Assembly (NCBI RefSeq): GCF_006345805.1 | Contig: NC_043008.1 | Span: 39,060,001-39,124,000 of the forward strand | Direction of reading: 5' to 3' | Source of the DNA: Octopus sinensis | Lineage: Eukaryota | DNA: 64,000 nucleotides | Part shown: positions 13,255 through 40,279 of the stretch, piece after piece | Layout: each line of letters starts with the position of its first letter | Position numbering within the stretch: position 1 is the first letter of the stretch | Made by a program: the position numbers and the translations under genes | The notes under the pieces: generated by a model | What the model was told of the DNA's origin: nothing | The model's database searches: none | Seen by the model: the letters and a program-made list of their open reading frames with translations, nothing else

Positions 13255-13330
<76 letters not shown>

Positions 13331-15087: not shown

Positions 15088-18000
15088 TTATTTGAATTTG
15101 TGTTGTGAGAGAGGGACTCCCAGGGATATATCAGGTAATTCTTTCATAAATGTGTCCTTACCCCACAGCCAGTACGTTGTCATTAATCCGCGACCTTTTA
15201 CTTGTCTCTGTCCTCTACTTTCTAAGATATAACCGCCTAATGTATCAAGAAGTGTTGCAGTAGTCTCGCTCACTTGAATGTGTAAGGCATAAGAACTAGA
15301 CTGCATTCTGGAAGCTGTGTTGACGGTGTCTCCGAATAGACAATATCTAGGCATTAGTTTCCCCACCACGCCACTTACTACCGGGCCGGAATGCATTCCC
15401 ACTCGTAACTGCAGCACGTCAGTTTCCATGGGATCAGCATGGAGTAGAGTAACATGTGACATCAGATCTAAAGCCATTGTTGCAATTTCTCCTGCATGGC
15501 GATCACCATTCTTTTCTGGAATACCACTAACTACCATGTAGGAATCGCTGATGGTTTCCACTTTGTAAACATCATAGCCGTCCAAAACTGAGTCAAATAT
15601 TTTATAAACTTCATTTAAAAAATCAACGATTTCCATTGGCTACTTTCTTTACATATTCGGCCAAAATTCACGATATCACTGAAGAATACCGTGGCATTTT
15701 CGAATAATTCCGGTATCACTTCACCAACTTGTTTCAGTTCACAAGCTACTTTCGGGGGCAACATCTGGCCCAATAGCTGCTCAGCTTTAGCTTTTTTTTC
15801 TTCTAGTTCTCTGGTTCTTTCTATCACGATTATTTCTAAATTATTGGAGTAAGTTTCCAAGAGGTGGATTAATTTATCTATAAGTTCTCCTTTTATGGGG
15901 TACATTTGATTTAGAATTATGCTAATATTATTAAAAGTCGGTCGTGACGATGCCTTCTCATTCCAAGACTCTTCAAGCATTTTTTTAAACAGCTTCTTAG
16001 ATAGCTTACTGTTTGGTAATAAATCATCACTTAAAATTGGTCTCGTAAAAATCATTTTACCTCCACCAATACTCTCCCATACACGTCGTATTTCTTTATT
16101 GTCCGGTGACTTTGAATCTTTAATGAGTTCTAAAATGCTTTTTTCACTTAAATGTTTCAGTTCATAATGGTATGGTTTTGCCTTCGTCACAATTTCACAC
16201 GCAATGATAGCAAATGAATAGACATCTCCTTCCGGTGTGCCCCATTTTACCCCGTCGAGATTTGTGCTTTCCCTCAGTAGTTCGGGTGCGGTCCAAAAAA
16301 GATCTTTTAAATCATACATTTCTTCAGACTCTGGGATTCTGTAGCTTCCATAACGAAGAAACGGTGCACCAAATCCTGACAGACGTACAGTCCAGCGCTT
16401 ATCAACCAAGCAGTTGGAAGATTTCAGACGTCCATGGCTTTTGATTTCAGATTTGTCATGCAAATATTCCATTCCGCAACATATATCTTTTAAAAATGAA
16501 AATCCAAATGCCCATCCGATCTCAAATGTTTCATTGGCAAGTACATCCGCTATACTCCCCTTGTCAGCAATTTCCATGAACAAACTGACGTTAGGATAAG
16601 TCAAACAGCATCCACCGTATTGGATCAGATTATAATGTCTAGTCTTAGTTAACTTGACCATGTCCGAAATAATCTTTTTATCATCAGGAAGAATTGTCTT
16701 ACTATTAATCTTTTTCACATACCATTCCTGATCGTCCCATCGATAAACCGCAACTTGTTTGTTAATAATACCTGTGTACGTCTCTGCCGTAACTATGCGC
16801 TCAGGTTTAGTTACTGTATCCCAGTCAATCAGCCATTCCTGAAAACTCACTCTTTTCGTCTTTCGATCCAAAATTGTCAACATGAAATAAAAAAAACAAC
16901 ACAGAAGAGTCAATCCTACACAGAGTGGTATTATGATGCTCATAATATGAACGTCGCAATGCTTTCCAATGTATAATATAGTACTGCACACACATTCATG
17001 TGGTTTTTTGCATATACCAGCATGACATTTTTTGCAGATTGGTTGTTTACAAGTAACACCTTTATAGCCAGCATTACACACGCACGTACCGTCAACCTGG
17101 CACACACCATTTTTACATTGACATGAAATTGTGTGACAATACTTCCCTTCGAATCCTTCAAAGCATTCGCATTTGTTACCAGGACGACATATTCCTCGAT
17201 CGAAAACATTAATATTACTAGGGTCTTTTAATTTGTATCCACAGGCATGAACGCAATAATATGGTGGAACTATACTTTCTGTTCGCATAAAAAGGGTTGG
17301 TGGCCAATCTTCACCCTCTTTTGGCATCATTTTTTGTGTATTGAGACTAACCATCCCCGATAAAGATATGTATCGTCTAGTGTTATGTGCCTTACCGACA
17401 GGAAATGCTACCAGTGCCGCAGTTTTATTGTGAGGAAGTATTTCCGATTCGTAAGGTATTTCTAATTGAATACCGTCTTCCGATCTCTTAATACATTTTA
17501 CGTAAGTTATAACTTTAGATTTCGGCAAATATGGCCAACGTGGGATTGGGTTAACTTGGGCCAGATAACCGAAATAACCAATTCTATCACCGTATGCATT
17601 TAAAGATACTTTATCTGTTAGTCCATGTATAGTTGTCTTGCGCATGAGCCAATTAACTTTGTTACCTCTAAATGTTAGTCGTTTATTGAGAAGTATGGCT
17701 AACGCTTTAGCGTAAAGGTGCACGGCGTCATAACCCAATCCCATTAACGCTCCTATTTCAAAGGATCTATAACGAACTCTTCCACCTTTGTAAAGTACAC
17801 GGTCTTCTTTAAAATAATAATTAAGAACTCGTTTCCAACTATCTGTTTGGTAACCCGATACATTGTAGGTCGAATCAAAGAGGTAGGTTCCAGTAAAAGC
17901 TAATGTGCATTCTAACTTTTTGTTACAAACCGAATGGTTCTCAAATGGAAACTCTCGCGCGTACTTTTTCATTAAAACCCATTGGAATCCATGCAGAGAA

Positions 18001-20131
18001 GAAAGGTTCATAAGATAGGCTTCTCGAAAGACGATTGGCTGTATATGGAATGGAGCAAACAGAAAGATTACTTTCAAGTTAGTTTTTTTCACTTCCCCCA
18101 AATCATTACTGAGCATACCATCTTGCAAATACTTGGGTTTAAGATTTTTCATTTCTTTCAAAATGATGTGATTTCGTATATTGATGTTGTATTTGATAGC
18201 CGCAGTATAGAATGACTTACTAAGTTCAATAGTCGAATATCGAATGATTACAATATCAGTCCAAAATCTATCTTTGGCTGATTGAAACACGGAATTATAA
18301 AATTCCTCTTCGGTCCAAGTTAAACTGTTATAAAATAGGTATGAATTTTTATCGGAGAATTCTCTGGAAAAGTCGATTGTCGAAATAAGTGGTATCATAA
18401 ACTTCGTTAAAAATGGGCTAAAAAGTTTAGCAACATTTCCTGGAACAGAACTTATAACCAAACTAATATTACTTAAAATATTTTTTAAACCCCCAAGTTT
18501 TCTATAGGTTGCAGGTTTTTCATTTGGAACATTGTACGACTTCAATAGGAAGTTTATACCGTTTTTTTTTAACTCTGGAGCAATAATACCATTGTTAACA
18601 TCATTGATAGCGAATCGGATAAAAGAATTGATATGTGAGTCAATTTCTTTTCCATCGCCACTAAATCGAAGGTCACCAAAATGTCCAATTGTAATGTTTC
18701 CTGTTATACGAAAAGCCGGAGTTATGATAGAAATAGCGTTCTCCTCAATTGCAGTTATTCTTAATTTGACGGAATTGACTACTTCACAAATAGATACCAA
18801 TAACTGGATTTTTCCATCTGACATTCCCACGGTGCTATGTTTTGAAAAACATATATTTTCTGGGATTGTATTAATAGATAGGCGTAATTTGGAGTTAGGG
18901 CCTGAATAGATCCGACGACCTGAAGTATCCAGTGCTAAAATACTCATGCCGTAAAGTAAAGGACAAGTGATAGGTACTTCTACAATTCCCCCATTATTTT
19001 TAAGTTTAGAATACATACTTTTTGAGAAGTTGTCCATAGCAATGGCACCTAACGCTACAACTGCTACTGTGAAATTCCTCGTGAAGACAACAGGTAGAAT
19101 CTTTTCCTCTTCCTCAGTTGTTAATCGTTGGAAAGTAATAAACTTTCTGTCACTGGACAACTGTCTTGCACGTTCGATGTCAAGGAAACATTCTGAGCAA
19201 GCAGGAATTCTGCTCCATGGGTCTCTTGCCATGGTTAAAGTAATATTTAGTTGCAAATTTTCTGTTACGTCTAAAATTCGAACTCCAGTAAATTTTGCCG
19301 TACCATAATTTGCTTGTTGACGCATTATTATATCTCGTGTTTTAAAATCAATTGTTACATTCTCTCCATCCATTCGAATTTTAGTGTAATCAATCATCAT
19401 TTCTCTCTCTGGGTCAGCATAGAAACGTTTATAATTGTAAGGAATTGTCATTTCCACAATTGCTACCGAATCAAGACCATTTATGAGAGTATTCCTTCTT
19501 CATCTCTTATTTCAACCTCAACATCAAAATCGTGATTAGCCAAAACTGTTACAGGTGGTTGTTTCGTTACAACTAACCGGTGTGCAGGTTTGGTTACAAA
19601 TATTGGGAAAGAGTCGACGTATATTTTATAATCTGGTATTTCGATCCTGAACATTCGCATGGATGGAGGTACAATGGTATGTTTATGGTAAATCCAATCA
19701 AATATGAGTTTTCCATTAAAAATTCGTGATTTCATTAGAATGGAAGAATGCGGTGTATGACAACGAGTTTTCGCAAGATGTCTGTTATATCGCTCCGGAT
19801 AATTCAACCACCACGCTGATTTCTGACACAGTTGGCCGCCACTGTCTGCCCAAGTATCTTTGTTATTAATCTCGCCAGATGGCGAAACAGCATAGCTGTC
19901 TATTGTAGCCGTCATATTGACTTCTCCCCCAGAAAAAGGTGTCCCGTTTGAATAAAAGGCAACGACAATGATCGGTTTGCTGATCATTTGATTGAGTGGC
20001 ACTGAATAGTATAACTTTGAAGGATCATCGGGTATAATTGCAGGAGGTTCGTGAAATTGTAGAAATGATAATTCCAATTGTCCTGTCACAAACATCCAAG
20101 TAGAGATAAGAATGAGGCATGTAATTGTCAT
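15088..20131 (-). CDS. Receptor guanylyl cyclase copy 1, intronless, split by two 1-bp deletions (near 19492 and 15640); assembly error or very young pseudogene
   Basis: ORFs 19481-20131, 15615-19457 and 15088-15636 are collinear with copy 2. Span is 5044 versus 5046 bp, with no other indel or internal stop seen. Motifs HGRLKSSNC, FSDIVNF, KVETISDSY, PRYCLFGDTVNTASRM. Confidence 0.85.
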
Positions 20132-20607
20132 AGTTTATCGGATATTTCATGAACAAAATGCGTTTGAATAATCATTTGTCGTTTAAAAGCATTGTAATTT
20201 TTCTATTTCAACATGAAAAACTAAATGCTAGCCAGAGCGCCTATGCAATTAAACAAAGAAATCTGAGAAAAATAAAATCTATCAACGTCTTTCTTAAACG
20301 CAACTTCATATGTTAAACACTCACTTTTGATCTGATAATAAGCGTTTATTTTTTTTTATTTTCTTCTTTCATAATTTGAATTCCATATGAAATTGTTTTA
20401 GAGTAGCGTCTCTGATAAAAGAAAAATTTAAGAAAGCATCTTCGTGAATATTTATCACACCTACATGCAGAAAATAGATGCACACATACGCACACGCATG
20501 ATTGCGTGTATGTGTGTGGATGTGTGTGCGAGCGTATGTATGTGTGTTCTCGCTATCTATTTATCTATCTATTTATTTATTTGTCTCTCTCTCTCTCTCT
20601 CCCTCCG

Positions 20608-20660
<53 letters not shown>

Positions 20661-20725
20661 ATGTATGTGTGTGTGTGTGTATATGTATATATATACATTT
20701 AACTATATATATATGTCTATATATA

Positions 20726-20780
<55 letters not shown>

Positions 20781-20939
20781 CTTTATTACCCACAAGGGCC
20801 TAAACATAGAGGAGACAAACAAGAACAGACAAAGGGATTAAGTCCATTAGATCGACCCAGTGCGAAACTGGTACCTTATTTATCGACCCCGAAAGGATGA
20901 AAGGCAAAGTCGTTAATCGAAACATGAAACCACAAAGAG

Positions 20940-22660
20940 AATCACAACAACGCGAGGACGTGATGAGAGATTGACCAGAGAGGAAAGTGTTTGTCTCCAA
21001 TCCTTTCAGACACGTCCACCAGATGCATTCTTTCGCTATAGCCACAAGAATGATGAAAATAGCTCTTCCTTCCCGTTTGAAGGAAGGAGGCATGACAATA
21101 TTGACGATAGACTCAGCTGATAAACCGACTTGTCCCACACGTGACAGCAGTCCTTCGAGATAAGCCCACAAGTCGGCAATTGTTGGACACTGCACGAGTG
21201 CGTCCAGAACGATTTCGTCGCTCTTACCGCATCTCGAGCAGGTCGGCCCCGTGTTTTTCGAGTCGTGTCGGTAGAGCTTATCCCGAAAAGATAGCGCTTC
21301 TCGGTAGCACTGCCAGGCCAGGGATCTCTGGAAGTTGTCCATTGTCCTGGCCCGAAAGTCGTCCTGAACAGACGGGTCAGGTATTCCTCGTCGACGCCCA
21401 GGTTTGCTCCGAGCTCGTCGTCGTACCCCCCACCCCTTGACTAATCCCCTATAGAATGCTTTGGTTATGTTGAAGTCACTCAAAGTCGACCCGGGACGGC
21501 ATAGTTGCTTGAGAGCAACGCGACACTCGCGGTGCGATTCGCCCTTCCTCGGCCTCTTTTTGATCCACGACTGCAGTTCGGTCATGGAGACGAGCTGCGG
21601 GAAAGCGTGCCTCACAAACGGCGACCACACCTGTTCACCGTCGTCTACGTAGAGCCTGAGATGTCGCAGTCTCAGCGCGTGTCTGCGCATCATCAACCAC
21701 GGCATGCTCAGTCCTCCTTTTAACAGGTGTTGACAGCAAATGGATCGCCTGACCATCGCAACGCATCCTTTCCATAAGAAGCGGAAGAGAATGCGTTCTA
21801 GTTTGGTGATGGGAGGGTCGGGACAAGGTACGACGGTCAGGCGGTAGTTGATGACGGACACGATGTACGCGTTCGCCACCTCCACCCGACCTTTTAGGGA
21901 CAGTTTCCTCTCGGCCCATTGCCGGGCGAGAGTGACCACACTACTCGTTATCTCGTTCCAGTTCTTCTCCATTTGGAGGTCCGGACCAAGCCAGACCCCG
22001 AGCAACTCGACCGGACCGTCGATCCAGCGTCCCACGACGGAGGCGGTGGTGGATGGCATGGGCTTGCTTCTCCAGGTGCCGAGTCGCAAGCCCACTGACT
22101 TTTTCCGGTTGATTTTCACTCCTGTCACCGCTTCGTAGTCTTTCAGTGTCTCGCCGACCAGCTTGATGTGCTCGTGGCTAGACACTATTACGGTGACGTC
22201 GTCCGCGCATGCAGACACGTTCGTCCCGCATTCCAATTCTCGCGGGATGCCCCTCAGAGTTGCCAGCTTCAGCAATAATGGCTCGAGAGTCAATACTTAT
22301 AGAAGCGACGAGAGGGGGCATCCCTGACGGACCGAACGTGCAATGTCAAAAGGTTTCGATAGATGTCCATTTACGCGAATTACCGAACGGATACCGCTGT
22401 ACAAAGCGGCTATCCAGCCGCGGAAGGCGGTACCGAAACCAACCGCTCTGAGGACAGCCTCCAAGTATCGATGGTCTACCCTATCAAAAGATTTCGATTG
22501 ATCCAAAATGATCAAAGCCCTACCCATTCCAGGTTCTTTAACTACCCTGTCTATGATGTAGTGCTTCAGATGGAGGTTGTCATGGATGCTCCGGCCCGGT
22601 ACGGCGCATGCTTGCACCTAGTCGACCAGTTTCTTGATGACAAGCGCCAACCTCTTGAGA
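20940..22660 (-). mobile_element. 5'-truncated L1/Tx1-clade LINE (RT and C-terminal Cys region)
   Basis: LDQSKSFDRVDHRYL, SVRQGCPLSSLL, ACADDVTV, LGVWLG, TCSRCG; homologous to 28320-30157. Confidence 0.88.
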
Positions 22661-22714
22661 TAGATAGATAGATAGATGGATGGATTGATAGATACATATT
22701 CTTTTATTCTTTTA

Positions 22715-23015
22715 CTTGATTCACCACCATAAGTCGAACTATTCAACCCTAGAGCTTATTGTATCGGTTTCTTTTCGCCGTGCCGCTTTGTTACTAAAAT
22801 CAGTGTCAAATAGTGGAGGGGGAACAAATAGACAAACAAACAAACAAACACACACTCACACACACACACACACACATGTATATATATATATATATATATA
22901 CATATACGACGGGTTTCTTTTAGTTTTCTTCTACCAAATCCACTCACAAGGCTTGGGTCGGCCTAAGGTTTTAGTAGAAGAGAATTGCCCAAGACGCCAC
23001 TGTATGGGATTGAAC
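22715..23015 (-). mobile_element. Degenerate type A SINE
   Basis: ctaccaaatccactcacaaggc...ttgcccaag shared with 5428-5839. Confidence 0.7.
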
Positions 23016-23049
23016 TACCTTATTTCATAATATTTGCCATAAAGGCAGT

Positions 23050-25320: not shown

Positions 25321-25948
25321 TGACTAACTGCGCATGAGTTATACTACTTACCACACAGCCGCTCCAGTACTCACACACACAGATACACACATACACATAC
25401 ACACATATATATATATATATATATATACATACACACATATATATACATATATATATATCTGCTTGTGTGTGTGTGTCACAGGTTATGTTACTGTTAAACT
25501 TTTCAAAGTCAATGAGACAGTGTAAGAATGAACATGTAACAAAAATATTGCTTACAATTTTTATTCGTACAGAGGACCTGTATACAATGAAAACTCACGC
25601 GCCGCCTTTAGACGTGGGTCTGTTAGAAAAGGCTTCTTGCTAGAAAGCGAAAATGCACGGCGTGTTTGAAGCGATAAAATACTGACCGCTGTTATTGTCT
25701 GAGCGTTCCTATTGATACGTATGAGAAAAATTGAAGGAATTTTCGGAAACAAAGAAATGAATGTCTTATCTATGCTAACTCAAATACAGGAACCAGTATA
25801 AGCTTCACAAGTGACTTCATCAATTATCGAGTACTAACGCCAGCAACAAAGGAAAGGACCTGGTAGGAAATACCAGGCTAAAGTTTCGATTCTTGGCTAT
25901 GAACCCAAGAAACGTCTTCTCATTCGCTCATATGTTATGTATGTATGT

Positions 25949-26244
25949 CTTTCCTATTTTTTAATTATTAGAAATCTTCCGCTGAAGAGGAAGCCGGTTT
26001 CCAACAAAAATGCAAGGCTCCATATTTGGAGCTTGCAGAAATTCTTGCATATTTTTACCTTGCACTCACAGATAGCACGTTGTAATTTTCGAATTAGCCG
26101 GTTGATTACTCTTTCTGAAAATTCCCAGTTTATCCAGATTCGCCTTTCAGTATGTACCAATAAAACTTAATGCTCCAGTTTTTATTGGTTTCCATAAAAA
26201 TTCATAGTCTAGACATAGAAGCTGGAGGATTCGAAGCAGTTATC
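25949..26244 (-). mobile_element. RLE-type (R4/Dong-like) LINE 3' fragment
   Basis: Reverse complement is homologous to about 34780-35090 (LQLLYPDY...LGFSE...LIR..ICKNF); (TACA)n at both ends. Confidence 0.7.
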
Positions 26245-26475
26245 TATGTATGTATGTGTGTATGTATTTATGTATGATATATGTATGTATGCATTTATTT
26301 ATTTATTTATGTATACATGTATGCATGTATTTTGTCATTATTCAGTTTATTTCATGATTTTTTGCCAATAAAGAAAGAACCGGTTTCTAACCTAGATTAA
26401 AGTCTCCTTCATTGGAAATTCAACATCAAGAACAGGGTATTTTTTATGTATGTATGTATGCATGTATGCATGTAA

Positions 26476-26506
<31 letters not shown>

Positions 26507-26519
26507 TGTATGTATGTAC

Positions 26520-28300
26520 TACTAGTGAAGGAGAAGTGGAGGGCAGCATGGAAAGATTTGACAAAAGAGAGGTAGGAGTCTAGATGTTCGTGAGAGAGTG
26601 AGGTTGCATCGATACAGTCGTCAACATAACGGCCTTGTATTTTGGGAGTGGGACCAGTGAAACTTGAGAATATTTGGGTCTCAACATAGCCAACCAACAG
26701 GTTCGCATAGTTGGGGCCCATTCTCGTTCCCATTGCCACTCCCAAGACGGTGCTGGTAGAAATCGCCCGGACCGAGAAGCAGTTGAGTGAGAGGACAAGT
26801 TCGGCCAGACGAACGAGTGTGGAGGTGTCGGGTTGGGGGTTGGGTCGCACGTCAAGGAAGTATTTCAGTGCACGCAGCCCCTTGTGGTAAGGGATCACCG
26901 TGTAAATGCTCTGGATATCGAGAGTTTAGAGGGGCAAGGAGGGAAGGAGAAAGAGTTGAACAGACGAAGAGCATGATTTGTGTCATGGAGAGAAGCCAAT
27001 AGGGGGTTGGGGTAAGATAATTGGAGATAAGCTCGGTGGGGCAGGTACAGGCAGAGACGAGGGGGCGGGCAGGGTATTTAGGTTTGGGGATTTGGGGGAG
27101 GAAGTAAATGGTGGGTGTGCGGAGGTTCGGACAATGAGGTTGGAGGCGGTGTGGGGGAGACGGGAGGAGGAGATGCGGTCATGGATAGGGGAGGACACCG
27201 TCTGTTGGTAGCTGGGCGTGAGGTCAGAGGGCAGAAGGCAGCAGAAGGAGGTGTCTTGAAGTTAGAGGAGAGCTTCGGCTTATAGAGGTCCGCTCGCCAT
27301 ACCACCACGGCTGCACCCTTGTCGGCCGGTTTTATAACGATGTCAGTGCGGCGTCGGAGAGAACGAAGAGCGGAGAGTTCGGCTGGGGAGATTCTGAGAC
27401 AACAAGGGACGCCTGGAGAAGTTAAACCGGTTCACCGCGTGCTGGCAGGCACCCGCAAAAATCTCAACTGCTTGGAACTGGCCAGGAGCAGACATCCACT
27501 GGATGGTCGGCCGCCTAGGTCAGTTAAGTACTCCTCCTCGTTAGATGTGGGTGGAGTGTCGCGGAAAAGCGAACACAACATAACGCTGCGCACAAAGCTG
27601 TGGATATAAGCACGAGTCTGAAATTCATTGCAGGATGAATTGTGGCGGATGAAACGCAGACCCCTACTGAGGATGGAGCGCTCCGCCTCAGAAAGAAGAT
27701 ATGGCGGAATGGTAACAACAGACTGAAGTAGAAGCGGTGGATGGAATAGAAGTAGGAGGGGTTGTAGGGCTGGTGGAAGGCTTGGAGGGAGGGCATGGGG
27801 ATGTGTGAGAGAAATTTGGGGGGTTGAGGATGGGGGAACGTGTCATGGAGGGAGAAGGGTAGTGGAGGAGGTGGGGTAGTGGAATCTGTTGAGATGGAAT
27901 GAAGGAGAGAGTGGAGTTTACGATGTTTGGTGTTGGCAAGATATTGATGAAAGAGATGAGTTAAATGAATTATATATGGCAACGTTTTGTGAGAATGGGA
28001 GGGGGACAGAGAGGAGGAAAAGATGGAAAAAGCCGGAGGGAGAAGGCGGTCGATGGTATGTATTTTAGAGAGATTGGAGCAAATGGTGGCACGCATAAGG
28101 CAGTAGGATGTAGTACGGAGTATGGGAAGGATGGTTGAAGCAGAATGGAGAGTAGGGCGAAATGGAAGCGGAAACCTTTTGGGATGAGGCGGTGATGTAA
28201 GCAACGACTGAGAAATGAAACGTGGCTAAAGAAACAAGTTTTTTTGAAAATATGTAAAGAAAGTTTAATGAAAGGCTGAATCTTCACCTTCACCGCTACA
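26520..28300 (-). mobile_element. Penelope-like retroelement fragment
   Basis: RT motifs GVAMGTRMGPNYANL and GRYVDD; VVWRADLY upstream; frameshifted. Confidence 0.8.
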
Positions 28301-28319
28301 CCTTAGATATGGTTGGGAA

Positions 28320-30157
28320 ATTAACCGACGAAGGAAGGGCATAGGTCCATTTAGACCAAAGTAAAGCGTTCGATTGGTTAGACCATCAGTACCTGGAGGC
28401 GGTCCTCGAAGCGGGTAGATCTCCGCTATGTACAGCGGCATCTAGTCCACAGTCCAGATAAATAGCTACCTAAAGGAGCCGTTTTCGATCAAGCGTTCTG
28501 TTCGTCAAGGGTGTCCCTTGCCTCCGCTTCTGTACGTCTTGGTTCTTGAGCCATTACTGCGGAAGTTGGAGAAGTTAGGAAACAACCCCAATGAAATCGG
28601 GTGCGGTGGGTTTGTTTCTGCTTTAGGGGAAGATGTCACCCTCATCGGATCCAACGTAGCTCAGCTACCTCGTGTAGAAGATACTCTCCGACGATACGAA
28701 GCGGTGGCAAGGGCAAAAGTTAACAAGGTCGAATCGATCGGTTTGCGCCTCGGCACTTGTAGGAACAATCCGATATCGTCCAGTGTCGTTGGACACTGGA
28801 CAGATTGCCCTGTTGGGTTGCTTGGAGTTTGGTTTGGCCCGGACTCCCAGATGGAGAAGAATTGGAGCGAGGTAGTGGACATGGTGGAGGCCATAGTACG
28901 GGAGTGGTCCGGAAGACCTCTGTTCTTGAAGGGCATGGGCGGAGGTGGTGAAGGTGTTTATAGCATCTGTAATCTCCTACCGCCTGTCCGTTGTGCCTTG
29001 CCCCGATTTGTGGCTAAACAAGTTGGAAAGACTCCTCTTCCAGTTTTTGCTGAAGGGAGGAAACCACTTGTGAGGCGCTCTGTTTACTGCGAGGAACCGT
29101 TAAACGGTGGACTGGGAATGCCTTGGCTGATGATGCGCAGATATGCGTTGAGGTTGAGACATCTCTGGTACCACCTGGAGGGTGATAAGGTGTGGAGTCC
29201 GCTGGCGTAGGAGTTCTTGCCGCGACCGGCCTGTTTGGAGAGATTTAAACCCGGTTTCATTAAAAGATGTAACCTAACTTCATGGCAGAAGGAGTGCCGT
29301 CAGGCACTCTGGCTGATCGACAAGTTGGGAAAGGAATACCACCTCGGTGTTCTATAGAGGGCTGGTAGAGGCAAAAAAAATGATGACGTTCTAGGAGGGG
29401 CTGTAGGATTCGATGGGAACCTGTTTAAAAAATCTTTCAGTTCGTGGTACTTGGATAACTTCCAAAAATCCCTGACCTGTCAGTGCTACAGGAATGCTTT
29501 ACCTGTTCGCGATAAGTTATCCAGGCAGGGAATGTCAATACCACGGCCGTGTCCAAGATGTGGGCTGGAAAATGAGACTGTCCAGCACGCTTTTCTAGAA
29601 TGCCGGGAGCTATCTAGCTTGAAATGTTACGTTGAACACGTGCTGTCGCATCTGGGACGAGTACAGCTGTCGGGTGGATCTATGATAAAGATGATACCGC
29701 CAACTGGACACTCAAAAGAAGGTAAGGCATGTTTTTACTGTACGTTTGCAGTACTGAAAGAGTGTGTTTGGAGGACTAGAATGGAAGGTTCTGTGACAGG
29801 GTCCTTCGTCTCTGGCCCCGGTTTGCTGTCCTATTTCAGATACCATCTGAAGAGCAAGATGGGGTTGAGAGGAAGACCCTGCCACCGAGTGAATACGAGA
29901 AACGATGGAAGGATGTGATGAGATAGGTGGGTGTTAGTAACCCAGTTTAATCATTGAGGAAAGGAAAAGATAGTTGTTGGGCCTTATAGGCTGCCGGGTT
30001 CGATCTGTTTGAGCTTTTATTCATTTTCTTTCTTTATTTCCGTTTTTTTAAAGTTATTGTCAAACTTAATGCTCATTCGAACTCATATAAGATTTTTGTA
30101 TTTGTTTGTCTTGTAATGTCTTTGTCTATGTACGATCAGTTTGACCATAATAAAGAT
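28320..30157 (+). mobile_element. 5'-truncated L1/Tx1-clade LINE with 3' UTR
   Basis: LDQSKAFD, SVRQGCPLPPLLYVLVLEPLL, LGVWFG, CPRCGLENETVQHAFLEC; aataaa near 30149. Confidence 0.88.
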
Positions 30158-33305: not shown

Positions 33306-33790
33306 TATGATAAATGAAATAACCAAATGAATTTTATTACAAGTGAAAAGTGAATAATAAAAGTTTTCAATAAAACATCAAATATAGCCACATTTCTTTT
33401 TATTGAAACAAATTTTCTATTATACATGTAAGTATGTAAAGTTGAATTAAAAACAAAATGTGAACAAAACAGTTTCATGAGGAATTTTCAAAATTAGAAA
33501 CAATTTTAAAAATCAGATGAAATCTTGTAGAATGGTGGAATTGATTCCAATTGTTACCAATTTCAATTTCATTTTGTAGTGAAGATGGGCTGAATATTTT
33601 TTAACATTTATATGCGAATAATATATGAATACAGTATGTTTTAAGAAAAAAAACAGCACCGTCTCTTTTTTCTATTGTAAAGTTCAGATTTTGTGAGTGA
33701 AAATGTGTGTATGTATGTATGTATGTATTTGTGTGTGTGCGAGTGTGTGTGTGTGCGTGTGTGTGTGAGTAAGTTTGGAGTTATACTCCC

Positions 33791-33834
<44 letters not shown>

Positions 33835-33869
33835 TATTATATTATTATTATTATATATTATTATTATAT

Positions 33870-33913
<44 letters not shown>

Positions 33914-34318
33914 TACCTTTCCGTCGGCTACGACGACCAGCGTACCAGTTGATACGATAGATGGAACAGCCTACCCGTGAAATTAAAGTACAAGTGACGG
34001 AGCATTCCACAGGCACGTGTAACCGGAATTTAATTCTGAGGAAGATCTAGTGTGACATAGAAAGTGGAAAGGCTGCTCCCATTTGAATTACAGGTACATT
34101 TCATTTTTGTTTGGTGAGAGGAGCAACGTGAATTAAAGTATCTTGCTAAAGGTCACAACGCGCTGCCGGGGTTCGAACTCATAACTTTCTGATCGTAACC
34201 GCTAAGCCACGCAACTTCACAATATACATACATACAACATACATACATACATACATGCATGCACACACATATATACATATACACATACATACATACATGC
34301 ACAAAAATATATACATAT

Positions 34319-34349
<31 letters not shown>

Positions 34350-34422
34350 TACATACGTACATACATACATACATACATACATACATACATACATACATAC
34401 ATACATACATACATACATACAC

Positions 34423-35090
34423 GCATGGAAGTCATCCCGCATGTGATTAGCTGCTATCTTAAAAAGTCGCCACGGTACTAACTCCCTATGCGTCATGATG
34501 TAGCTAAAACTGTTCATAATGCCATCCGCAATAAAGTGTATCCTGAAATAAACTTTAAAAATCCGTGTTATGAAATACATTGATAAACACCAACTCAAGG
34601 GATAGTAGCGGAATATTCCCATTAAAGCTTCTGTCAAATGTAAACATAACAGACTGGATATTGTTGTTTGGGAAAATGGGCAAAGATATGTACCATCATA
34701 GAGGTCAGCTGCTCTGTAGATATAAATAACTCATAGAAAATCAAAGAAAAAGAAAATATCTATGGACAACCACTTCGAAACCTGCAGCTTCTATATCCAG
34801 ACTATGAATTCATATTCATACAAATAATAATTAGAGCATTAGGTTTTGTCAGTAAATGCTTTAGTGAGAATCAGGATAAACTGGGATTTTCAGAAAGAGA
34901 AACTGGCCGGCTAATTCGTACATTACAGGTACAATCTGTGGGTGGAACAGTAAATATATGCAAGAATTTTCTCATGTTCCAATTGTGAATTTGTCTGTGT
35001 TAACTACATCCCACAGATGGAGCCTTGTATCTTTGTTGGAAACCGGCTCCGTCCTCAGTGGAAGATTTCTAATGATTAAAAACTAGGAGA
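34423..35090 (+). mobile_element. RLE-type (R4/Dong-like) LINE 3' fragment
   Basis: RHD.AKTVHNAIR zinc-finger remnant, then KHNRLDIVVW...TIIEVSC...KEKENIYG (PD-(D/E)xK-like); between (TACA)n tracts. Confidence 0.75.
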
Positions 35091-35233
35091 AACACACACA
35101 TACACACACACATACATACATACATGCATACATACATACATACATACATACATACATACATACATACATACATACATAAACACATACTACAATATGTATG
35201 GTGTTTTATAGATAAATTTATGCACTGGTGGCT

Positions 35234-38200
35234 TTATTTGAATTTGTGTTGTGAGAGAGGGACTCCCAGGGATATATCAGGGAATTCTTTCATAAATGTG
35301 TCCTTACCCCACAACCAGTACGTTGTCATTAATCCGCGACCTCTTACTTCTCTTTCCCCTCTACATTCTAATTTATAACCGCCTAAAGAATCAAGAATTG
35401 CTGCAGTATTCTCGCTCACTTGAATGTGTAAGGCATAAGAACTAGACTGCATTCTGGAAGCTGTGTTGACGGTGTCTCCGAATAGACAAAATCTAGGCAA
35501 TAGTTTCCCCACCACGCCACTTACTACCGGGCCGGAATGCATTCCAATTCGTAATTGTAGCACATTACTTTCCGTGTTGGGAACATGGAGTAGAGTAACA
35601 TATGACATCAGATCTAAAGCCATTGTTGCAATTTCTCCTGCATGGCGATCACCATTCTTTTCTGGAATACCACTAACTACCATGTAGGAATCGCTGATGG
35701 ATTCCACTTTATAAACATCATAGCCGTCCACCACTGAGTCAAATAATTTATAAACTTCATTTAAAAAATCAACGATTTCCATTGGTTTACTTTCTTTACA
35801 TATTCGGCCAAAATTCACGATATCACTGAAGAATACCGTGGCATTTTCGAATAATTCCGGTATCACTTCACCAACTTGTTTCAGTTCACAAGCTACTTTC
35901 GGGGGCAACATCTGGCCCAATAGCTGCTCAGCTTTAGCTTTTTTTTCTTCTAGTTCTCTGGTTCTTTCTATTACAACCATTTCTAAATTATTGGAATAAG
36001 TTTCCAAGAGGTGGATTAATTTATCTATAAGTTCTCCTTTTATGGGGTACATTTGATTTAGAATGATGCTAAGCTTATTAAAAGTCGGTCGTGAAGATTC
36101 CTTCTCATTCCAAGACTCTTCGAGCATTTTTTTAAACAGCTTCTTAGATAGATTACTGTTTGGTAATAAATCTTCACTTAAAATTGGTCTTGTAAAAATC
36201 ATTTTACCTCCACCAATACTCTCCCATACACGTCGTATTTCTTTATTGGCCCGTGAATGTGAATCTTTAATGAGATCTAAAATGCTTTTTTCACTTAAAT
36301 GTTTCAGTTCGTAATGGTATGGTTTTACCTTCGTCACAATTTCACACGCAATGATAGCAAATGAATAGACATCTCCTTGCGGTGTGCCCGACTTTACTCC
36401 ATCGAGATTTGTGTTATCCCTCAGTAGTTCGGGTGCGGTCCAAAAAAGATCTTTTAAATCAGACATTTCTTCAGACTCTGGGATTCTGTAGCTGCCATAA
36501 CGAAGAGACGGTGCACCAAATCCTGACAGACGTACAGTCCAGCGCTTATCAACCAAGCAGTTGGAAGATTTCAGACGTCCATGGCTTTTGATTTCAGATT
36601 TGTCATGCAAATATTCCATTCCGCAACATATATCTTTTAAAAATGAAAATCCAAATTCCCATCCGATCTCAAATGTTTCATTGGCAAGTACATCCGCTAT
36701 ACTCCCCTTGTCAGCAATTTCCATGAACAAACTGACGTTAGGATAAGTCAAACAGCATCCACCGTATCGAATCAGATTATAATGTCTAGTTTTAGTTAAC
36801 TTGACCATGTCTGAAATAATCTTTTTATCATCAGGAGGAATTGTCTTACTATTAATCTTTTTCACATACCAGTTCTCATTGTCCCATCTATAAGCTGCAA
36901 CCGTTTTGTTAATTATTCCCTTGGATTGTCCTACCATACCTAATTTTTCAGGTACAGTAACGTTGTCCCAATCAATCATCCAGTCTTGATAGATTATACT
37001 TTTCGTCTTCGAGCTAGTTATTCCTGCCACGACATAAAAGATACCAATGAGAATAAGTGCTGCAAATAATATTGGAACAATGATGGATGAAATATGAATA
37101 GCACAATTTTCACCGAAATATACTATAGTAGTGCATTCACATACACCTGGTTTTACACATACACCAAAATTACAATCCTCACAAATTGCTGCACCACAAG
37201 AGGGACCTGTATAACCAGGATTACATATGCAAGAACCTTCAATAGTGCAAAGGCCGTGTAAACAATGGCACTGAACAGTGTGACAATGCTTCCCTTCGAA
37301 TCCTTCAAAGCATTCGCATTTGTCATCTGGACGACATATTCCTCCATCAAAAACATTAATATTACCGGGGTCTTTTAACTTTTCACCACACGCATGAACG
37401 CAATAATATGGTGGAACTATACTTTCTGTCCGAATAAAAATGGTTGGCGGCCAATCTTCACCCTCTTTTGGCATCATTTTTTGTGTATTGAGACTAACCA
37501 TCCCCGATAAAGATATGTATTGTCTAGTGTTATGTACCTTACCGACAGGAAATGCTACCAGTGCCGCAGTTTTATTGTGAGGAAGTATTTTCGATTCGTA
37601 AGGTATTTCTAATTGAATACCGTCTTCCGATCTCTTAATACACTTTACGTAAGTTATAATTTTAGATTTCGGCAAATATGGCCAACGTGGGATTGGGTTA
37701 ACTTGGGCCAGATAACCGAAATAACCAATTCTATCACCGTATGCATTTAAAGATACTTTATCTGTTAGTCCATGTATAGTTATCTTGCGCATGAGCCAAT
37801 TAACCTTCGCACCGTTAAGTGTTAGTTGTTTATTGAGAAGTATGGCTAACGCTTTAGCGTAAAGGTGCACGGCGTCATAACCCAATCCCATTAACGCTCC
37901 TATTTCAAAGGATCTATAACGAACTCTTCCACCTTTGTAAAGTACACGGTCTTCTTTAAAATAATAATTAAGAACTCGTTTCCAACTATCTGTTTGGTAA
38001 CCCGATACATTGTAGGTCGAATCAAAGAGGTAGGTTCCAGTAAAAGCTAATGTGCATTCTAATTTTTTGTTACAAACCGAATGGTTCTCAAATGGAAACT
38101 CTCGCGCGTATTTTCTCATTAAAATCCATTGGAATCCATGCAGAGAAGAAAGGTTCATAAGATAGGCTTCTCGAAAGACGATTGGCTGTATATGGAATGG

Positions 38201-40279
38201 AGCAAACAGAAAGATTACTTTCAAGTTAGTTCTTTTCACTGCTTCCAACGATGATTTCAGCTTCCTGTCATACAAGTTCTTCGGTTTTAAATCTTTTACT
38301 GCCCCAAAGACAAATTCATTGCGTAAGTTAATTTTGTATTTGATAGCCACAGAATAGAATAAACCAGTTAAATTAATATCGTGATATCGAAGGATTACAA
38401 CGTCAGTCCAAAACCTATCTTTAGCACATTGAAACACTGAATTATAGAACGCCTCCTCTGACCAACTTATACTATTATACAATGGGTATATATCTTTATC
38501 GATGTATTCTCTGGTAGAATCGATCGTCGAAATATAAGGTATCCTAAACTTCACTATGAACGGACTAAAAACATTAGCAACATTTCCTGGAATGGAACTT
38601 ATAACCAAATGAATATTAGTTGAAATAGTTTCCAAATCCCCAAGTTTTCTATAGGTTGCAGATTTTTCGTTTGGAATATTATACGACTTCAAATATAATT
38701 TCAATCCTTTCTTTCTTAATTCTGGGACAATAATACCATTATTAACATCATTGATTGCGAATCGTATAAAAGAATTGATATGTGAGTCAATTTCCTTTCC
38801 ATCACCACTAAATCGAAGGTCACCAAAATGTCCAATTGTAATGTTTCCTATTATACGAAAAGCTGGAGTTCTGTAAGTAACAGTAGGTGGACCATCGTAA
38901 GTTATTATCAGTTTGACGGAGTTGACTACCTCACATATAGATACAAATACGAGAGCTTTTCCTTCTGACATATTCCTAGTGTAGTCCTTTGACAAACATA
39001 TATCTTTTGGGATTGTATTAATATTTAGGCGTGATGTGGAGTGAGGACCTGAATAGATCCGACGTTCTTTCATATCCATTGCAAAAATACTTAAGCCGTT
39101 AAGTAGAGGACAACTAATAGGCACCTCTACAACATTTTCATTAGTTTTAAGTTTAGAATACATACTTTTTGATGAGGTGTCCATATCAACTTTATTCAGA
39201 ATTTGATAATGTACTGAGAAATTCTTCGTGAAGACAACAGGTAATATCTTTTCCTCTTCCTCAGTTGTTAATCGTTGGAAAGTAATAAACTTTCTGTCAC
39301 TGGACAACTGTCTTGCACGTTCGATGTCAAGGAAACATTCTGAGCAAGCAGGAATTCTGCTCCATGGGTCTCTTGCCATGGTTAAAGTAATATTTAGTTG
39401 CAAATTTTCTGTAACGTCTAAAATTCGAACTCCAGTAAATTTTGCCTTACCATAATTTGCTTGTTGACGCATTATTATATCTCGTGTTTTAAAATCAATT
39501 ATTACATCCTCTCCATCCATTCGAATTTTAGTGTAATCAATCATCATTTCTCTCTCTGGGTCAGCATAGAAACGTTTATAATTGTAAGGAATTGTCATTT
39601 CCACAATTGCTACCGAATCAAGACCATTTATGAGAGTATTTCCTTCTTCATCTCTTATTTCAACCTCAACATCAAAATCGTGATTAGCCATTACTGTTAC
39701 AGGTGGTGGTTTCGTTACAACTAACCGGTGTGCAGGTTTGGTTACAAATATTGGAAAAGAGTCGACGTATATTTTATAATCTGGTATTTCGATCCTGAAC
39801 ATTCGCATGGATGGAGGTACAATGGTATGTTTATGGTAAATCCAATCAAATATGAGTTTTCCATTAAAAATTCGTGATTTCATTAGAATGGAAGAATGCG
39901 GTGTATGACAACGAGTTTTCGCAAGATGTCTGTTATATCGCTCCGGATAATTCAACCACCATGCTGATTTCTGACACAGTTGGCCGCCACTGTCTGCCCA
40001 AGTATCTTTGTTATTAATCTCGCCAGATGGCGAAACAGCATAGCTGTCTATTGTAGCCGTCGTATTGACTTCTCCCTCAGAAAAAGGTGTCCCGTTTGAA
40101 TAAACGGCAACGACAATGATCGGTTTGCTGATCATTTGATTGAGTGGCACTGAATAGTATAACTTTGAAGGATCATCGGGTATAATTGCGGGAGGTTCGT
40201 GAAATTGTAGAAATGATAATTCCAATTGTCCTGTCACAAACATCCAAGTAGAGATAAGAATGAGGCATGCAATTGTCAT
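35234..40279 (-). CDS. Receptor guanylyl cyclase copy 2, intronless, 1681 aa: signal peptide, 3 putative Ig-like repeats, Venus-flytrap domain, 3 EGF-like repeats, TM, kinase-homology domain, guanylate cyclase
   Basis: Uninterrupted ORF. Flytrap motifs FAINDVNN, RIPYIST, GYDAVHLYAKAL, GLTDKVSLNAYGDR. EGF Cys spacing at aa 960-1059; hydrophobic aa 1062-1087. HGRLKSSNC; helix LETYSNNLE...RTREL; cyclase FSDIVNF, KVESISDSY, PRFCLFGDTVNTASRM. Confidence 0.96.
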   Translation of the reverse strand: MTIACLILISTWMFVTGQLELSFLQFHEPPAIIPDDPSKLYYSVPLNQMISKPIIVVAVYSNGTPFSEGEVNTTATIDSYAVSPSGEINNKDTWADSGGQLCQKSAWWLNYPERYNRHLAKTRCHTPHSSILMKSRIFNGKLIFDWIYHKHTIVPPSMRMFRIEIPDYKIYVDSFPIFVTKPAHRLVVTKPPPVTVMANHDFDVEVEIRDEEGNTLINGLDSVAIVEMTIPYNYKRFYADPEREMMIDYTKIRMDGEDVIIDFKTRDIIMRQQANYGKAKFTGVRILDVTENLQLNITLTMARDPWSRIPACSECFLDIERARQLSSDRKFITFQRLTTEEEEKILPVVFTKNFSVHYQILNKVDMDTSSKSMYSKLKTNENVVEVPISCPLLNGLSIFAMDMKERRIYSGPHSTSRLNINTIPKDICLSKDYTRNMSEGKALVFVSICEVVNSVKLIITYDGPPTVTYRTPAFRIIGNITIGHFGDLRFSGDGKEIDSHINSFIRFAINDVNNGIIVPELRKKGLKLYLKSYNIPNEKSATYRKLGDLETISTNIHLVISSIPGNVANVFSPFIVKFRIPYISTIDSTREYIDKDIYPLYNSISWSEEAFYNSVFQCAKDRFWTDVVILRYHDINLTGLFYSVAIKYKINLRNEFVFGAVKDLKPKNLYDRKLKSSLEAVKRTNLKVIFLFAPFHIQPIVFREAYLMNLSSLHGFQWILMRKYAREFPFENHSVCNKKLECTLAFTGTYLFDSTYNVSGYQTDSWKRVLNYYFKEDRVLYKGGRVRYRSFEIGALMGLGYDAVHLYAKALAILLNKQLTLNGAKVNWLMRKITIHGLTDKVSLNAYGDRIGYFGYLAQVNPIPRWPYLPKSKIITYVKCIKRSEDGIQLEIPYESKILPHNKTAALVAFPVGKVHNTRQYISLSGMVSLNTQKMMPKEGEDWPPTIFIRTESIVPPYYCVHACGEKLKDPGNINVFDGGICRPDDKCECFEGFEGKHCHTVQCHCLHGLCTIEGSCICNPGYTGPSCGAAICEDCNFGVCVKPGVCECTTIVYFGENCAIHISSIIVPILFAALILIGIFYVVAGITSSKTKSIIYQDWMIDWDNVTVPEKLGMVGQSKGIINKTVAAYRWDNENWYVKKINSKTIPPDDKKIISDMVKLTKTRHYNLIRYGGCCLTYPNVSLFMEIADKGSIADVLANETFEIGWEFGFSFLKDICCGMEYLHDKSEIKSHGRLKSSNCLVDKRWTVRLSGFGAPSLRYGSYRIPESEEMSDLKDLFWTAPELLRDNTNLDGVKSGTPQGDVYSFAIIACEIVTKVKPYHYELKHLSEKSILDLIKDSHSRANKEIRRVWESIGGGKMIFTRPILSEDLLPNSNLSKKLFKKMLEESWNEKESSRPTFNKLSIILNQMYPIKGELIDKLIHLLETYSNNLEMVVIERTRELEEKKAKAEQLLGQMLPPKVACELKQVGEVIPELFENATVFFSDIVNFGRICKESKPMEIVDFLNEVYKLFDSVVDGYDVYKVESISDSYMVVSGIPEKNGDRHAGEIATMALDLMSYVTLLHVPNTESNVLQLRIGMHSGPVVSGVVGKLLPRFCLFGDTVNTASRMQSSSYALHIQVSENTAAILDSLGGYKLECRGEREVRGRGLMTTYWLWGKDTFMKEFPDISLGVPLSQHKFK

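What the first reader, a model, noticed from the sequence alone, without database searches (positions are those of the whole stretch)
16725..39217. Copies 1 and 2 alternate between near-identical and strongly diverged blocks
Manual gap-free alignment (copy 2 numbering): aa 1-354 about 97% identical; aa 355-684 about 65% (third Ig-like repeat and first half of the flytrap; 38228-39217 versus about 18080-19070); aa 685-1000 again near-identical; aa 1001-1136 about 45% (EGF2-3, TM, juxtamembrane; 36872-37279 versus 16725-17132); kinase and cyclase highly similar. Conserved blocks are near-identical at silent sites too, and the borders are sharp. Inference: gene conversion homogenises most of the gene while the likely ligand-facing and membrane segments stay distinct, giving different inputs on a shared signalling output.
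Basis: partly seen in the sequence, partly recalled or inferred. Interest (0 to 1): 0.75.

Follow-up and report, generated by a model that had tools for sequence, protein, structure and literature searches.

The report
Patchwork gene conversion between octopus receptor genes
Two neighbouring octopus receptor guanylyl cyclase genes keep overwriting most of each other's sequence, but two segments (part of the ligand-binding domain, and the EGF stalk plus membrane span) have stayed distinct since before the Octopus species compared here separated; this is a clear but ordinary case of a known evolutionary process.

Summary
The window is Octopus sinensis chromosome CM016870.1. Copy 1 (15088-20131, minus strand) and copy 2 (35234-40279, minus strand) are intronless receptor guanylyl cyclase genes.

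- **Silent divergence by block:** dS is about 0.03 in the conserved blocks. It is 0.41-0.58 in aa 352-683 and 1.05 in aa 1001-1136. Permutations never reach this clustering.
- **Other genomes:** O. vulgaris, O. bimaculoides and Argonauta hians decide the mechanism. In the diverged blocks the copies group by type across species (bootstrap 99-100%). In the conserved blocks they group by species lineage (100%).
- **A dated event:** O. vulgaris copy 2 carries a roughly 390-bp tract freshly overwritten by copy 1.

Interlocus gene conversion with divergence islands is therefore well supported.

The functional reading ("different inputs, shared output") stays untested. Between orthologs, dN/dS in the islands is about 1. 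All 18 stalk cysteines are kept, and EGF2-3 net charge is reversed between the two types. Copy 1 has two 1-bp frameshifts in this assembly, while its O. vulgaris ortholog is intact.

The Argonauta pair diverges from the same EGF1/EGF2 junction onward, but its flytrap is fully homogenised.

This is a new member of a known kind and of moderate interest.

The parts
15088..20131 (-). Copy 1 (type 1) receptor guanylyl cyclase gene, intronless. It is broken into three ORFs by two 1-bp deletions in this assembly.
   Evidence: ORFs 19481-20131, 15615-19457 and 15088-15636. Deletions relative to copy 2 lie near 19494 (AAA to AA) and 15642. The O. vulgaris ortholog is intact at 1681 aa.
35234..40279 (-). 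Copy 2 (type 2) receptor guanylyl cyclase gene: one intact ORF of 1681 aa.
   Evidence: Pfam finds ANF_receptor, EGF, kinase and Guanylate_cyc. The flytrap fold matches the human GC-A ectodomain.
15001..20495 (-). Duplicated unit of copy 1: about 364 bp of 5' flank, the CDS and about 87 bp of 3' flank.
   Evidence: blastn, 90.2% identity over 5.5 kb to 35148-40626. The 5' flank is 93-98% identical.
35148..40626 (-). Duplicated unit of copy 2.
39226..40279 (-). Block A of copy 2 (aa 1-351; copy 1: 19079-20131): homogenised.
   Evidence: dS 0.032. The tree groups by species lineage at 100%.
38864..39225 (-). Block B1 of copy 2 (aa 352-472, third beta-sandwich domain; copy 1: 18717-19078): diverged and fast-evolving.
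   Evidence: aa identity 58%, dS 0.41, dN/dS between orthologs about 1.1. It was overwritten by type 1 in O. vulgaris copy 2. Beta-sandwich fold.
38728..38863 (-). Island Bi (aa 473-517; copy 1: 18581-18716): protein conserved, silent sites partly diverged.
   Evidence: aa identity 98%, dS 0.19, dN/dS 0.05; 45 codons only.
38232..38727 (-). Block B2 of copy 2 (aa 518-683, first half of the flytrap; copy 1: 18085-18580): divergence island.
   Evidence: aa identity 61%, dS 0.58. Type-1 and type-2 clades across three Octopus species at 99-100%.
37278..38231 (-). Block C of copy 2 (aa 684-1000, second half of the flytrap, linker and EGF1; copy 1: 17131-18084): homogenised, with two short diverged patches (37805-37827 and 37324-37391).
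   Evidence: dS 0.029. Species-lineage clade at 100%.
36872..37277 (-). Block D of copy 2 (aa 1001-1136: EGF2-3, TM helix, juxtamembrane segment; copy 1: 16725-17130): the oldest divergence island.
   Evidence: aa identity 45%, dS 1.05. Type clades at 100%. All cysteines are kept and the net charge is reversed between types. Model TM helix at 1064-1088.
35234..36871 (-). Blocks E and F of copy 2 (kinase-homology and cyclase domains; copy 1: 15088-16724): homogenised, with two type-specific patches (35546-35583 and 35343-35409).
   Evidence: Kinase dS 0.085, cyclase dS 0.023, patches dS 0.40.
54496..59727 (+). Copy 3, a distant paralog (1743 aa). It does not take part in the exchange.
   Evidence: 45-49% aa identity in blocks A and C, and synonymous differences near saturation in every block with both copies.

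Best explanation
Copies 1 and 2 are tandem paralogs of an intronless octopod receptor guanylyl cyclase. The duplication is older than the split between O. bimaculoides and the O. sinensis/O. vulgaris lineage.

**Mechanism.** Repeated non-reciprocal exchange (interlocus gene conversion) between the two 5.5-kb units, which lie 14.6 kb apart, has overwritten these parts at different times:
- the 5' flank and the N-terminal domains;
- the second half of the flytrap plus EGF1;
- the kinase-homology domain and most of the cyclase domain.

**What escaped.** Three segments escaped and now behave as independent orthologous lineages ('type 1' and 'type 2'):
- the third beta-sandwich domain (only partly);
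- the first half of the flytrap;
- the EGF2-3 / transmembrane / juxtamembrane module.

**Why the borders stay sharp (inferred).** At 62-76% nucleotide identity these islands are too diverged to support homologous exchange, which would keep their borders sharp. They are also the fastest-evolving parts of the protein.

**Function (inferred).** Both types have been retained with intact cysteine scaffolds. So the likeliest functional reading is two receptors that differ in extracellular recognition, dimer pairing or signal transmission, and that share most of the catalytic machinery.

**Status of each step.** Shown: the mosaic, its age structure, the concerted evolution and one dated conversion event. 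Inferred: the recombination mechanism itself, the mismatch barrier and any functional difference.
For: 1. **dS differs more than 30-fold between adjacent blocks** (0.03 vs 1.05). The clustering is beyond all 5000 permutations.
2. **Per-block NJ trees conflict.**
   - Blocks B2 and D give (Os1,Ov1,Ob1) and (Os2,Ov2,Ob2) at 99-100%.
   - Blocks A, C and E+F give (Os1,Os2,Ov1,Ov2) at 100% and never the type clades.
3. **Paralogs are closer than orthologs in the conserved blocks.** Paralog dS is 0.02-0.085; O. sinensis vs O. bimaculoides ortholog dS in the same blocks is 0.11-0.24. The reverse holds in B2 and D.
4. **One dated event.** In CDS nt 1027-1416, O. vulgaris copy 2 differs from O. sinensis copy 2 at 92 sites.
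   - There it matches type 1 (86-98% per 90-nt window), with 73 'Os2-only' sites in B1.
   - Two partial O. vulgaris copies (OvA, OvB) still carry the type-2 version.
5. **Gene order is the same in three species:** type 2 upstream and type 1 downstream, with a spacer of about 14.6 kb in O. sinensis and O. vulgaris.
6. **The O. sinensis window and the O. vulgaris locus are collinear** from 42091 to 4754 at 95-98.5% identity. This argues against a chimeric assembly.
7. **The islands are retained, not decaying.** All 18 stalk cysteines are kept in all nine copies. Paralog dN/dS in D is 0.42. EGF2-3 net charge is +5/+5/+2 in type 1 and -4/-2/-3 in type 2.
8. **An Argonauta hians tandem pair that groups by itself shows a related pattern.** It is 98-100% identical from at least 1 kb upstream to CDS nt ~2840. 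It then drops to 61-73% from the same EGF1/EGF2 junction (aligned aa 1006 vs 1001).
Against: - No reads were available. Collapse or polishing artefacts inside each assembly cannot be excluded formally.
- The O. bimaculoides copies contain N gaps.
- Copy 1 here has two frameshifts, and O. vulgaris copy 2 has an A8-to-A9 frameshift. If real, one member of the pair is non-functional in each species.
- dN/dS in B1 and D between orthologs is about 1 (CI 0.7-2.0). This is not significantly above 1, so positive selection is not demonstrated.
- The trees are simple NJ on JC distances.
- dS near 1 is close to saturation.
Confidence: 0.88

Rival explanations
1. The conversion mosaic is the same, but the islands carry no adaptive meaning. 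The least constrained segments drifted apart fastest, passed the identity threshold needed for homologous exchange, and have since been protected passively by mismatch-dependent rejection of heteroduplex. On this view the two receptors may be functionally redundant, or one may be decaying.
For: - dN/dS between orthologs is about 1.1 in B1 and D, against 0.14-0.28 in the kinase and block C.
- One copy is frameshifted in each of two species.
- The islands have different ages (dS 0.41, 0.58 and 1.05), as expected for stepwise passive escape.
- The B1 island can still be overwritten, as in O. vulgaris.
Against: - Both types are retained with complete cysteine scaffolds, and the charge reversal is conserved across three species.
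- Paralog dN/dS in D and B2 is 0.42-0.44, which is below 1.
- The same EGF1/EGF2 border recurs in the separately grouping Argonauta pair.
- The frameshifts sit in short A runs and could be assembly errors.
Confidence: 0.35
2. The duplication is recent and the diverged blocks are patches imported from another, more distant paralog.
For: A third paralog lies in the same window (54496-59727), and O. vulgaris has further partial copies.
Against: - Copy 3 is equally far from both copies, with synonymous differences near saturation in every block.
- Both block types occur in O. bimaculoides at syntenic positions and group by type.
- The protein search found no other family member in O. vulgaris beyond the orthologs of copies 1-3.
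Confidence: 0.03
3. There has been no exchange. All blocks are the same age and only substitution rates differ: extreme constraint in the conserved blocks and fast evolution in the others.
For: The diverged blocks do have the highest dN/dS. The small island at aa 473-517 does look conserved by purifying selection alone.
Against: - Silent sites are homogenised too.
- Paralog dS (0.03) is below ortholog dS (0.11-0.24) in the same block.
- Tree topology switches between blocks.
- The non-coding 5' flank is also 93-98% identical.
Confidence: 0.03
4. The pattern is an assembly artefact: collapsed or chimeric paralogs in the O. sinensis assembly.
For: The copies are near-identical repeats in a long-read assembly, and two 1-bp indels in copy 1 hint at residual errors.
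Against: - The same mosaic with the same borders appears in the independent O. vulgaris assembly.
- Copy 1 there is 99-100% identical per 90-nt window (apart from two windows at 96-97%) and the locus is collinear.
- The mosaic is also present in O. bimaculoides.
Confidence: 0.02

Closest known systems
Concerted evolution of tandem duplicates with 'islands of divergence' that resist interlocus gene conversion. An example is the GOT1 paralogs of the copepod Tigriopus californicus (PMC3728101). The Teshima-Innan models and the human RHD/RHCE and red/green opsin pairs are cited from my own knowledge.
   Same: Most of the gene, including silent sites and the flank, is homogenised. Discrete internal segments keep old divergence. 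Adjacent segments give conflicting trees. The islands are read as candidates for selection for distinct function.
   Different: The gene family and organism are new. Here the pattern is followed through three Octopus species plus Argonauta, with one dated tract. The largest island covers a stalk/TM/juxtamembrane module, not a classical ligand pocket.
Gene conversion reported in octopod tandem clusters: reflectin and tyrosinase in Argonauta argo (PMC9635652).
   Same: Tandem duplicates in octopod genomes show long shared stretches and cluster by species.
   Different: Those cases were read as whole-gene or central-region homogenisation linked to dosage. No receptor guanylyl cyclase and no retained type-specific islands were described there.
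Membrane receptor guanylyl cyclases: human GC-A/NPR1 and the sea-urchin speract receptor (the name NCBI gives the O. vulgaris orthologs).
   Same: ANF_receptor flytrap, single TM, kinase-homology domain (with the HGRLKSSNC motif read directly from the translation), coiled linker and class III cyclase domain.
   Different: There is an extra N-terminal region of about 500 aa made of tandem beta-sandwich domains. Three EGF-like repeats sit between the flytrap and the membrane. The gene is intronless. The ligand is unknown.

Membership tests
Interlocus gene conversion / concerted evolution with divergence islands | In some segments, paralogs within a species are closer than orthologs between species. 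| tested here: met
   In blocks A, C, E and F paralog dS is 0.02-0.085 and O. sinensis vs O. bimaculoides ortholog dS is 0.11-0.24. The clade (Os1,Os2,Ov1,Ov2) has 100% bootstrap.
Interlocus gene conversion / concerted evolution with divergence islands | Adjacent segments of the same gene give incompatible, well-supported trees. | tested here: met
   B2 and D give type clades at 99-100%. A, C and E+F give type clades at 0%.
Interlocus gene conversion / concerted evolution with divergence islands | Homogenisation includes silent and non-coding sites and is more clustered than chance. | tested here: met
   dS 0.03 vs 1.05. The 5' flank is 93-98% identical. No permutation of 5000 reached the observed values for the two nucleotide-run tests and the variance test; 4 of 5000 did for the longest run of identical third positions.
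Interlocus gene conversion / concerted evolution with divergence islands | A lineage-specific tract with identifiable donor and recipient. | tested here: met
   In O. vulgaris copy 2, CDS nt ~1027-1416 now matches type 1, while O. sinensis copy 2 and the partial O. vulgaris copies keep type 2.
Interlocus gene conversion / concerted evolution with divergence islands | The islands are maintained by selection against conversion. | tested here: inconclusive
   Ortholog dN/dS is 1.09 in B1 and 1.13 in D, with CIs spanning 1. The conserved cysteines, the charge reversal and the Argonauta parallel are suggestive only.
Interlocus gene conversion / concerted evolution with divergence islands | Non-reciprocal transfer is observed directly, from population or pedigree data or from reads. 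| not testable with these tools
   No reads or population data were available.
Receptor (membrane) guanylyl cyclase | Extracellular periplasmic-binding-protein-like (ANF_receptor) flytrap domain. | tested here: met
   Pfam PF01094, E = 7e-14. The top Foldseek hit is the human GC-A ectodomain, TM-score 0.66 on the target.
Receptor (membrane) guanylyl cyclase | Single transmembrane helix followed by a kinase-homology domain. | tested here: met
   Model helix at 1064-1088. PK_Tyr_Ser-Thr and Pkinase hits at 1128-1403.
Receptor (membrane) guanylyl cyclase | C-terminal class III nucleotide cyclase catalytic domain. | tested here: met
   PF00211, E = 6e-58, aa 1475-1656.
Receptor (membrane) guanylyl cyclase | Ligand-dependent cGMP synthesis. 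| not testable with these tools
   This needs expression and an assay.

The most novel reading that the evidence does not exclude
The EGF2-3 / transmembrane / juxtamembrane module is a paralog 'identity' element of these octopod receptor cyclases. Selection keeps it distinct in Octopus and, in parallel, in Argonauta, because it sets which subunits pair or how the flytrap signal crosses the membrane. The basic-versus-acidic stalk would be part of this. Conversion is tolerated everywhere else. If so, gene-conversion maps could be used to find the specificity determinants of orphan receptors.
Probability: 0.25. Interest if true: 0.6.

Novelty: new member of a known kind. Interest (0 to 1): 0.45.

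Why it matters
The mosaic marks the few hundred residues in which two otherwise interchangeable orphan receptors differ. These are the first half of the flytrap and a cysteine-rich stalk/TM module with reversed charge. This gives ready-made chimera boundaries for asking what an octopod-specific receptor cyclase family senses and whether its subunits pair selectively.

For genome annotation, it explains why gene models in this array are fused or truncated. It also means whole-gene trees of these paralogs are meaningless.

As evolutionary biology, it is a well-resolved textbook-type case and not a new principle.

Tried and rejected
- **Copy 3 as donor of the diverged blocks.** Rejected: it is equally distant from both copies everywhere.
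- **GC-biased conversion signature.** GC3 is 0.26-0.36 in all blocks with no enrichment in converted blocks.
- **Orthology of the Argonauta pair to types 1 and 2.** The pair groups by itself in every block, and aa identity to either Octopus type in D is 32-36%. So it arose by independent duplication or was homogenised later. Saturation prevents a firm choice.
- **Sequence search of the N-terminal 520 aa against PDB.** Nothing significant. Only fold comparison gave tandem Ig-like/macroglobulin-like beta-sandwich matches, with low TM-scores because of domain orientation. So 'Ig-like' holds at fold level only.
- **EGF2-3 in the structure model.** Its pLDDT is below 50, so variable sites were not mapped on the structure.
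- **Literature searches** for this family in cephalopods found nothing specific.
- **Look-up of UniRef protein P0005** failed. Its cluster mate P0018 gave the O. bimaculoides locus.
Full report
**What is in the window.** The window comes from Octopus sinensis assembly GCA_006345805.1, chromosome CM016870.1, near 39.09 Mb. It holds three intronless genes for receptor guanylyl cyclases:

| Copy | Coordinates | Strand | State |
|---|---|---|---|
| 1 | 15088-20131 | minus | three ORFs, frameshifted |
| 2 | 35234-40279 | minus | one ORF of 1681 aa |
| 3 | 54496-59727 | plus | 1743 aa |

- Pfam finds ANF_receptor, EGF-like repeats, a kinase(-homology) domain and a class III cyclase domain.
- An AlphaFold model of aa 1-1140 (mean pLDDT 66) shows three things: beta-rich domains at about aa 50-300 and 330-490, an alpha/beta flytrap at about aa 500-860, and a TM helix at aa 1064-1088.
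- Its best structural matches are the human GC-A/NPR1 ectodomain and the GABA-B and CaSR flytraps.
- A separate model of aa 150-500 (pLDDT 78) matches tandem Ig-like/macroglobulin-like beta-sandwich arrays.

**The observation.**
- The duplicated unit runs from about 364 bp upstream of the ATG to about 87 bp past the stop: 15001-20495 = 35148-40626.
The stated figures and coordinates are correct.
- An HMM segmentation places diverged segments at CDS nt 1055-1416, 1553-2048 and 3003-3408, plus four short patches, with abrupt borders.
- Nei-Gojobori dS is 0.03 (block A, aa 1-351), 0.41 (B1, 353-472) and 0.19 (473-517). It is 0.58 (B2, 519-683), 0.03 (C, 684-962) and 1.05 (D, 1001-1136). It is 0.085 in the kinase and 0.02 in the cyclase.
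- Shuffling sites never reproduces the longest identical run (235 nt against a maximum of 134). It also never reproduces the variance of third-position differences (18.4 against a maximum of 5.8) in 5000 trials.

**Evidence from other genomes.** The protein search found relatives only in octopods and in a few unassigned contigs. I retrieved three loci.
- **O. vulgaris** (L001/L002, chromosome OX597825.1).
  - Copy 2-like gene Ov2 and copy 1-like gene Ov1, in the same order and about 14.6 kb apart.
  - Two partial pseudocopies, OvA and OvB, that share a 1041-bp internal deletion.
- **O. bimaculoides** (L003/L005). Ob2 then Ob1; both have N gaps.
- **Argonauta hians** (L006). Two tandem intronless copies.

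The O. sinensis window and the O. vulgaris locus are collinear from 42091 to 4754 at 95-98.5% identity. Copy 1 and Ov1 are 96-100% identical in every 90-nt window, and 99-100% in nearly all of them. This makes a chimeric assembly an unlikely cause.

**Per-block history.**
- Neighbour-joining trees with codon bootstrap give (Os1,Ov1,Ob1) and (Os2,Ov2,Ob2) at 99-100% in blocks B2 and D.
- They give (Os1,Os2,Ov1,Ov2) at 100%, and never the type clades, in blocks A, C and the kinase+cyclase.
- In the conserved blocks paralog dS (0.02-0.085) is below the O. sinensis vs O. bimaculoides ortholog dS (0.11-0.24). In B2 and D the order is reversed: 0.58 and 1.05 against 0.07-0.17.
- This is the signature of concerted evolution over most of the gene, with islands that have evolved independently since before the Octopus species compared here separated.

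**A dated conversion event.**
- Between O. sinensis and O. vulgaris, paralog differences are almost all shared by both species, so homogenisation of A, C, E and F mostly predates their split.
- The exception is CDS nt ~1027-1416. There Ov2 differs from Os2 at 92 sites (73 'Os2-only' sites in B1) and instead matches type 1.
- OvA and OvB still carry the type-2 version.
- This is a tract of about 390 bp copied from copy 1 into copy 2 in the O. vulgaris lineage.

**Nature of the islands.**
- Between orthologs, dN/dS is 1.09 in B1 (CI 0.76-1.61), 1.13 in D (0.72-1.98) and 0.61 in B2. It is 0.28 in C and 0.14 in the kinase.
- The islands are therefore the least constrained or most adaptively changing parts. 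Positive selection is not demonstrated.
- They are not decaying. All 18 cysteines of the stalk are kept in all nine copies examined, and paralog dN/dS in D is 0.42.
- EGF2-3 net charge is +5/+5/+2 in type 1 and -4/-2/-3 in type 2 across the three Octopus species.
- No GC-biased conversion signal is seen.
- aa 473-517 is conserved in protein but has dS 0.19 (45 codons). This fits purifying selection rather than recent conversion.

**Argonauta.**
- The two Argonauta copies group together in every block.
- They are 98-100% identical from at least 1 kb upstream through CDS nt ~2840.
- Identity then drops to 61-73% across the EGF2-3/TM/juxtamembrane segment and to 82-96% in the kinase and cyclase.
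- The 5' border (aligned aa 1006) coincides with the Octopus border (aa 1001). In contrast, the flytrap is fully homogenised.
- The recurrent island is therefore the stalk/TM module, not the ligand-binding domain.

**Interpretation.**
- At 62-76% identity the islands are now probably immune to exchange for mechanical reasons. This is inference from the known homology requirement of recombination.
- It means sharp borders do not by themselves prove ongoing selection.
- 'Different inputs on a shared output' is plausible but untested.
- Receptor cyclases act as dimers, the first flytrap lobe forms the dimer interface in NPR-A (my own knowledge), and block D is a transmission module. An equally good reading is therefore paralog-specific pairing or coupling.

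**Caveats.**
- In this assembly copy 1 has two 1-bp deletions, AAA to AA near 19494 and a second near 15642.
- O. vulgaris copy 2 has an A8-to-A9 insertion at CDS nt 4334.
- The respective orthologs are intact. These indels may be sequencing errors or real lineage-specific inactivations, and reads are needed to decide.

**Novelty.**
- Divergence islands under gene conversion are a known phenomenon (for example PMC3728101).
- Gene conversion in octopod tandem clusters has been reported for reflectin and tyrosinase (PMC9635652).
- I found no description of this receptor family or its mosaic.
- It is a new and unusually clean member of a known kind. Its added value is the Argonauta parallel and ready-made chimera borders for an orphan, octopod-expanded receptor architecture.

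Noticed in passing
window ~19494 and ~15642 (copy 1): Two 1-bp deletions relative to copy 2 split copy 1 into three ORFs. The first is AAA to AA and the second is AAAC to AGC. The O. vulgaris ortholog, about 99.7% identical, is intact. This is either a pseudogene or an assembly error.
   Followed up: partly
L001 5632-10678 (O. vulgaris copy 2), CDS nt 4334: An A8-to-A9 insertion between the kinase and cyclase domains frameshifts O. vulgaris copy 2. It explains the fused and truncated NCBI gene models P0001 and P0002.
   Followed up: partly
L002 1-3938 and 9761-12690 (O. vulgaris): Two extra partial type-2 copies share a 1041-bp internal deletion (CDS nt 1923-2963) and carry frameshifts, each followed by duplicated spacer. 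No further copy-2-like sequence was found in the O. sinensis window. This shows recent unequal exchange in the array.
   Followed up: partly
L006 365-6224 and 9001-14869 (Argonauta hians): The tandem pair is 98-100% identical from at least 1 kb upstream to CDS nt ~2840. It is then strongly diverged from the same EGF1/EGF2 junction as in Octopus.
   Followed up: yes
window 36872-37277 / 16725-17130 (aa 1001-1060 part): EGF2-3 net charge is basic in type 1 (+5, +5, +2) and acidic in type 2 (-4, -2, -3) across three Octopus species. Argonauta has +4 against 0. All cysteines are invariant.
   Followed up: partly
window 38780-40279 (aa 1-500 of copy 2): The N-terminal region of about 500 aa has no Pfam or PDB sequence match but is predicted as tandem beta-sandwich domains. 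Together with three EGF repeats between flytrap and membrane, and the lack of introns, this is an unusual receptor cyclase architecture. A 45%-identical relative on an unassigned ENA contig (L007) is intronless too.
   Followed up: partly
window 20800-22293 (-), 28518-29210 (+), 62939-63955 (-): ORFs 20800-22293 and 62939-63955 have weak reverse-transcriptase/zf-RVT matches, below Pfam thresholds. ORF 28518-29210 has no Pfam match but, by eye, resembles the first in translated sequence. All are probably remnants of non-LTR retroelements in the spacer and flank.
   Followed up: partly
window 26000-30000: The G+C content is higher (0.47-0.49) and the GC skew is strongly positive (+0.24 to +0.36), against a background G+C of about 0.36. 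The region is part of the spacer that is duplicated in O. vulgaris.
   Followed up: no
window 13000-13365, 34224-34421, 42715-43000: Long microsatellites, (TA)n, (ATAC)n and (TG)n-rich, lie within about 2 kb of the duplicated units. They produce spurious 'MYVC'-type ORFs.
   Followed up: no
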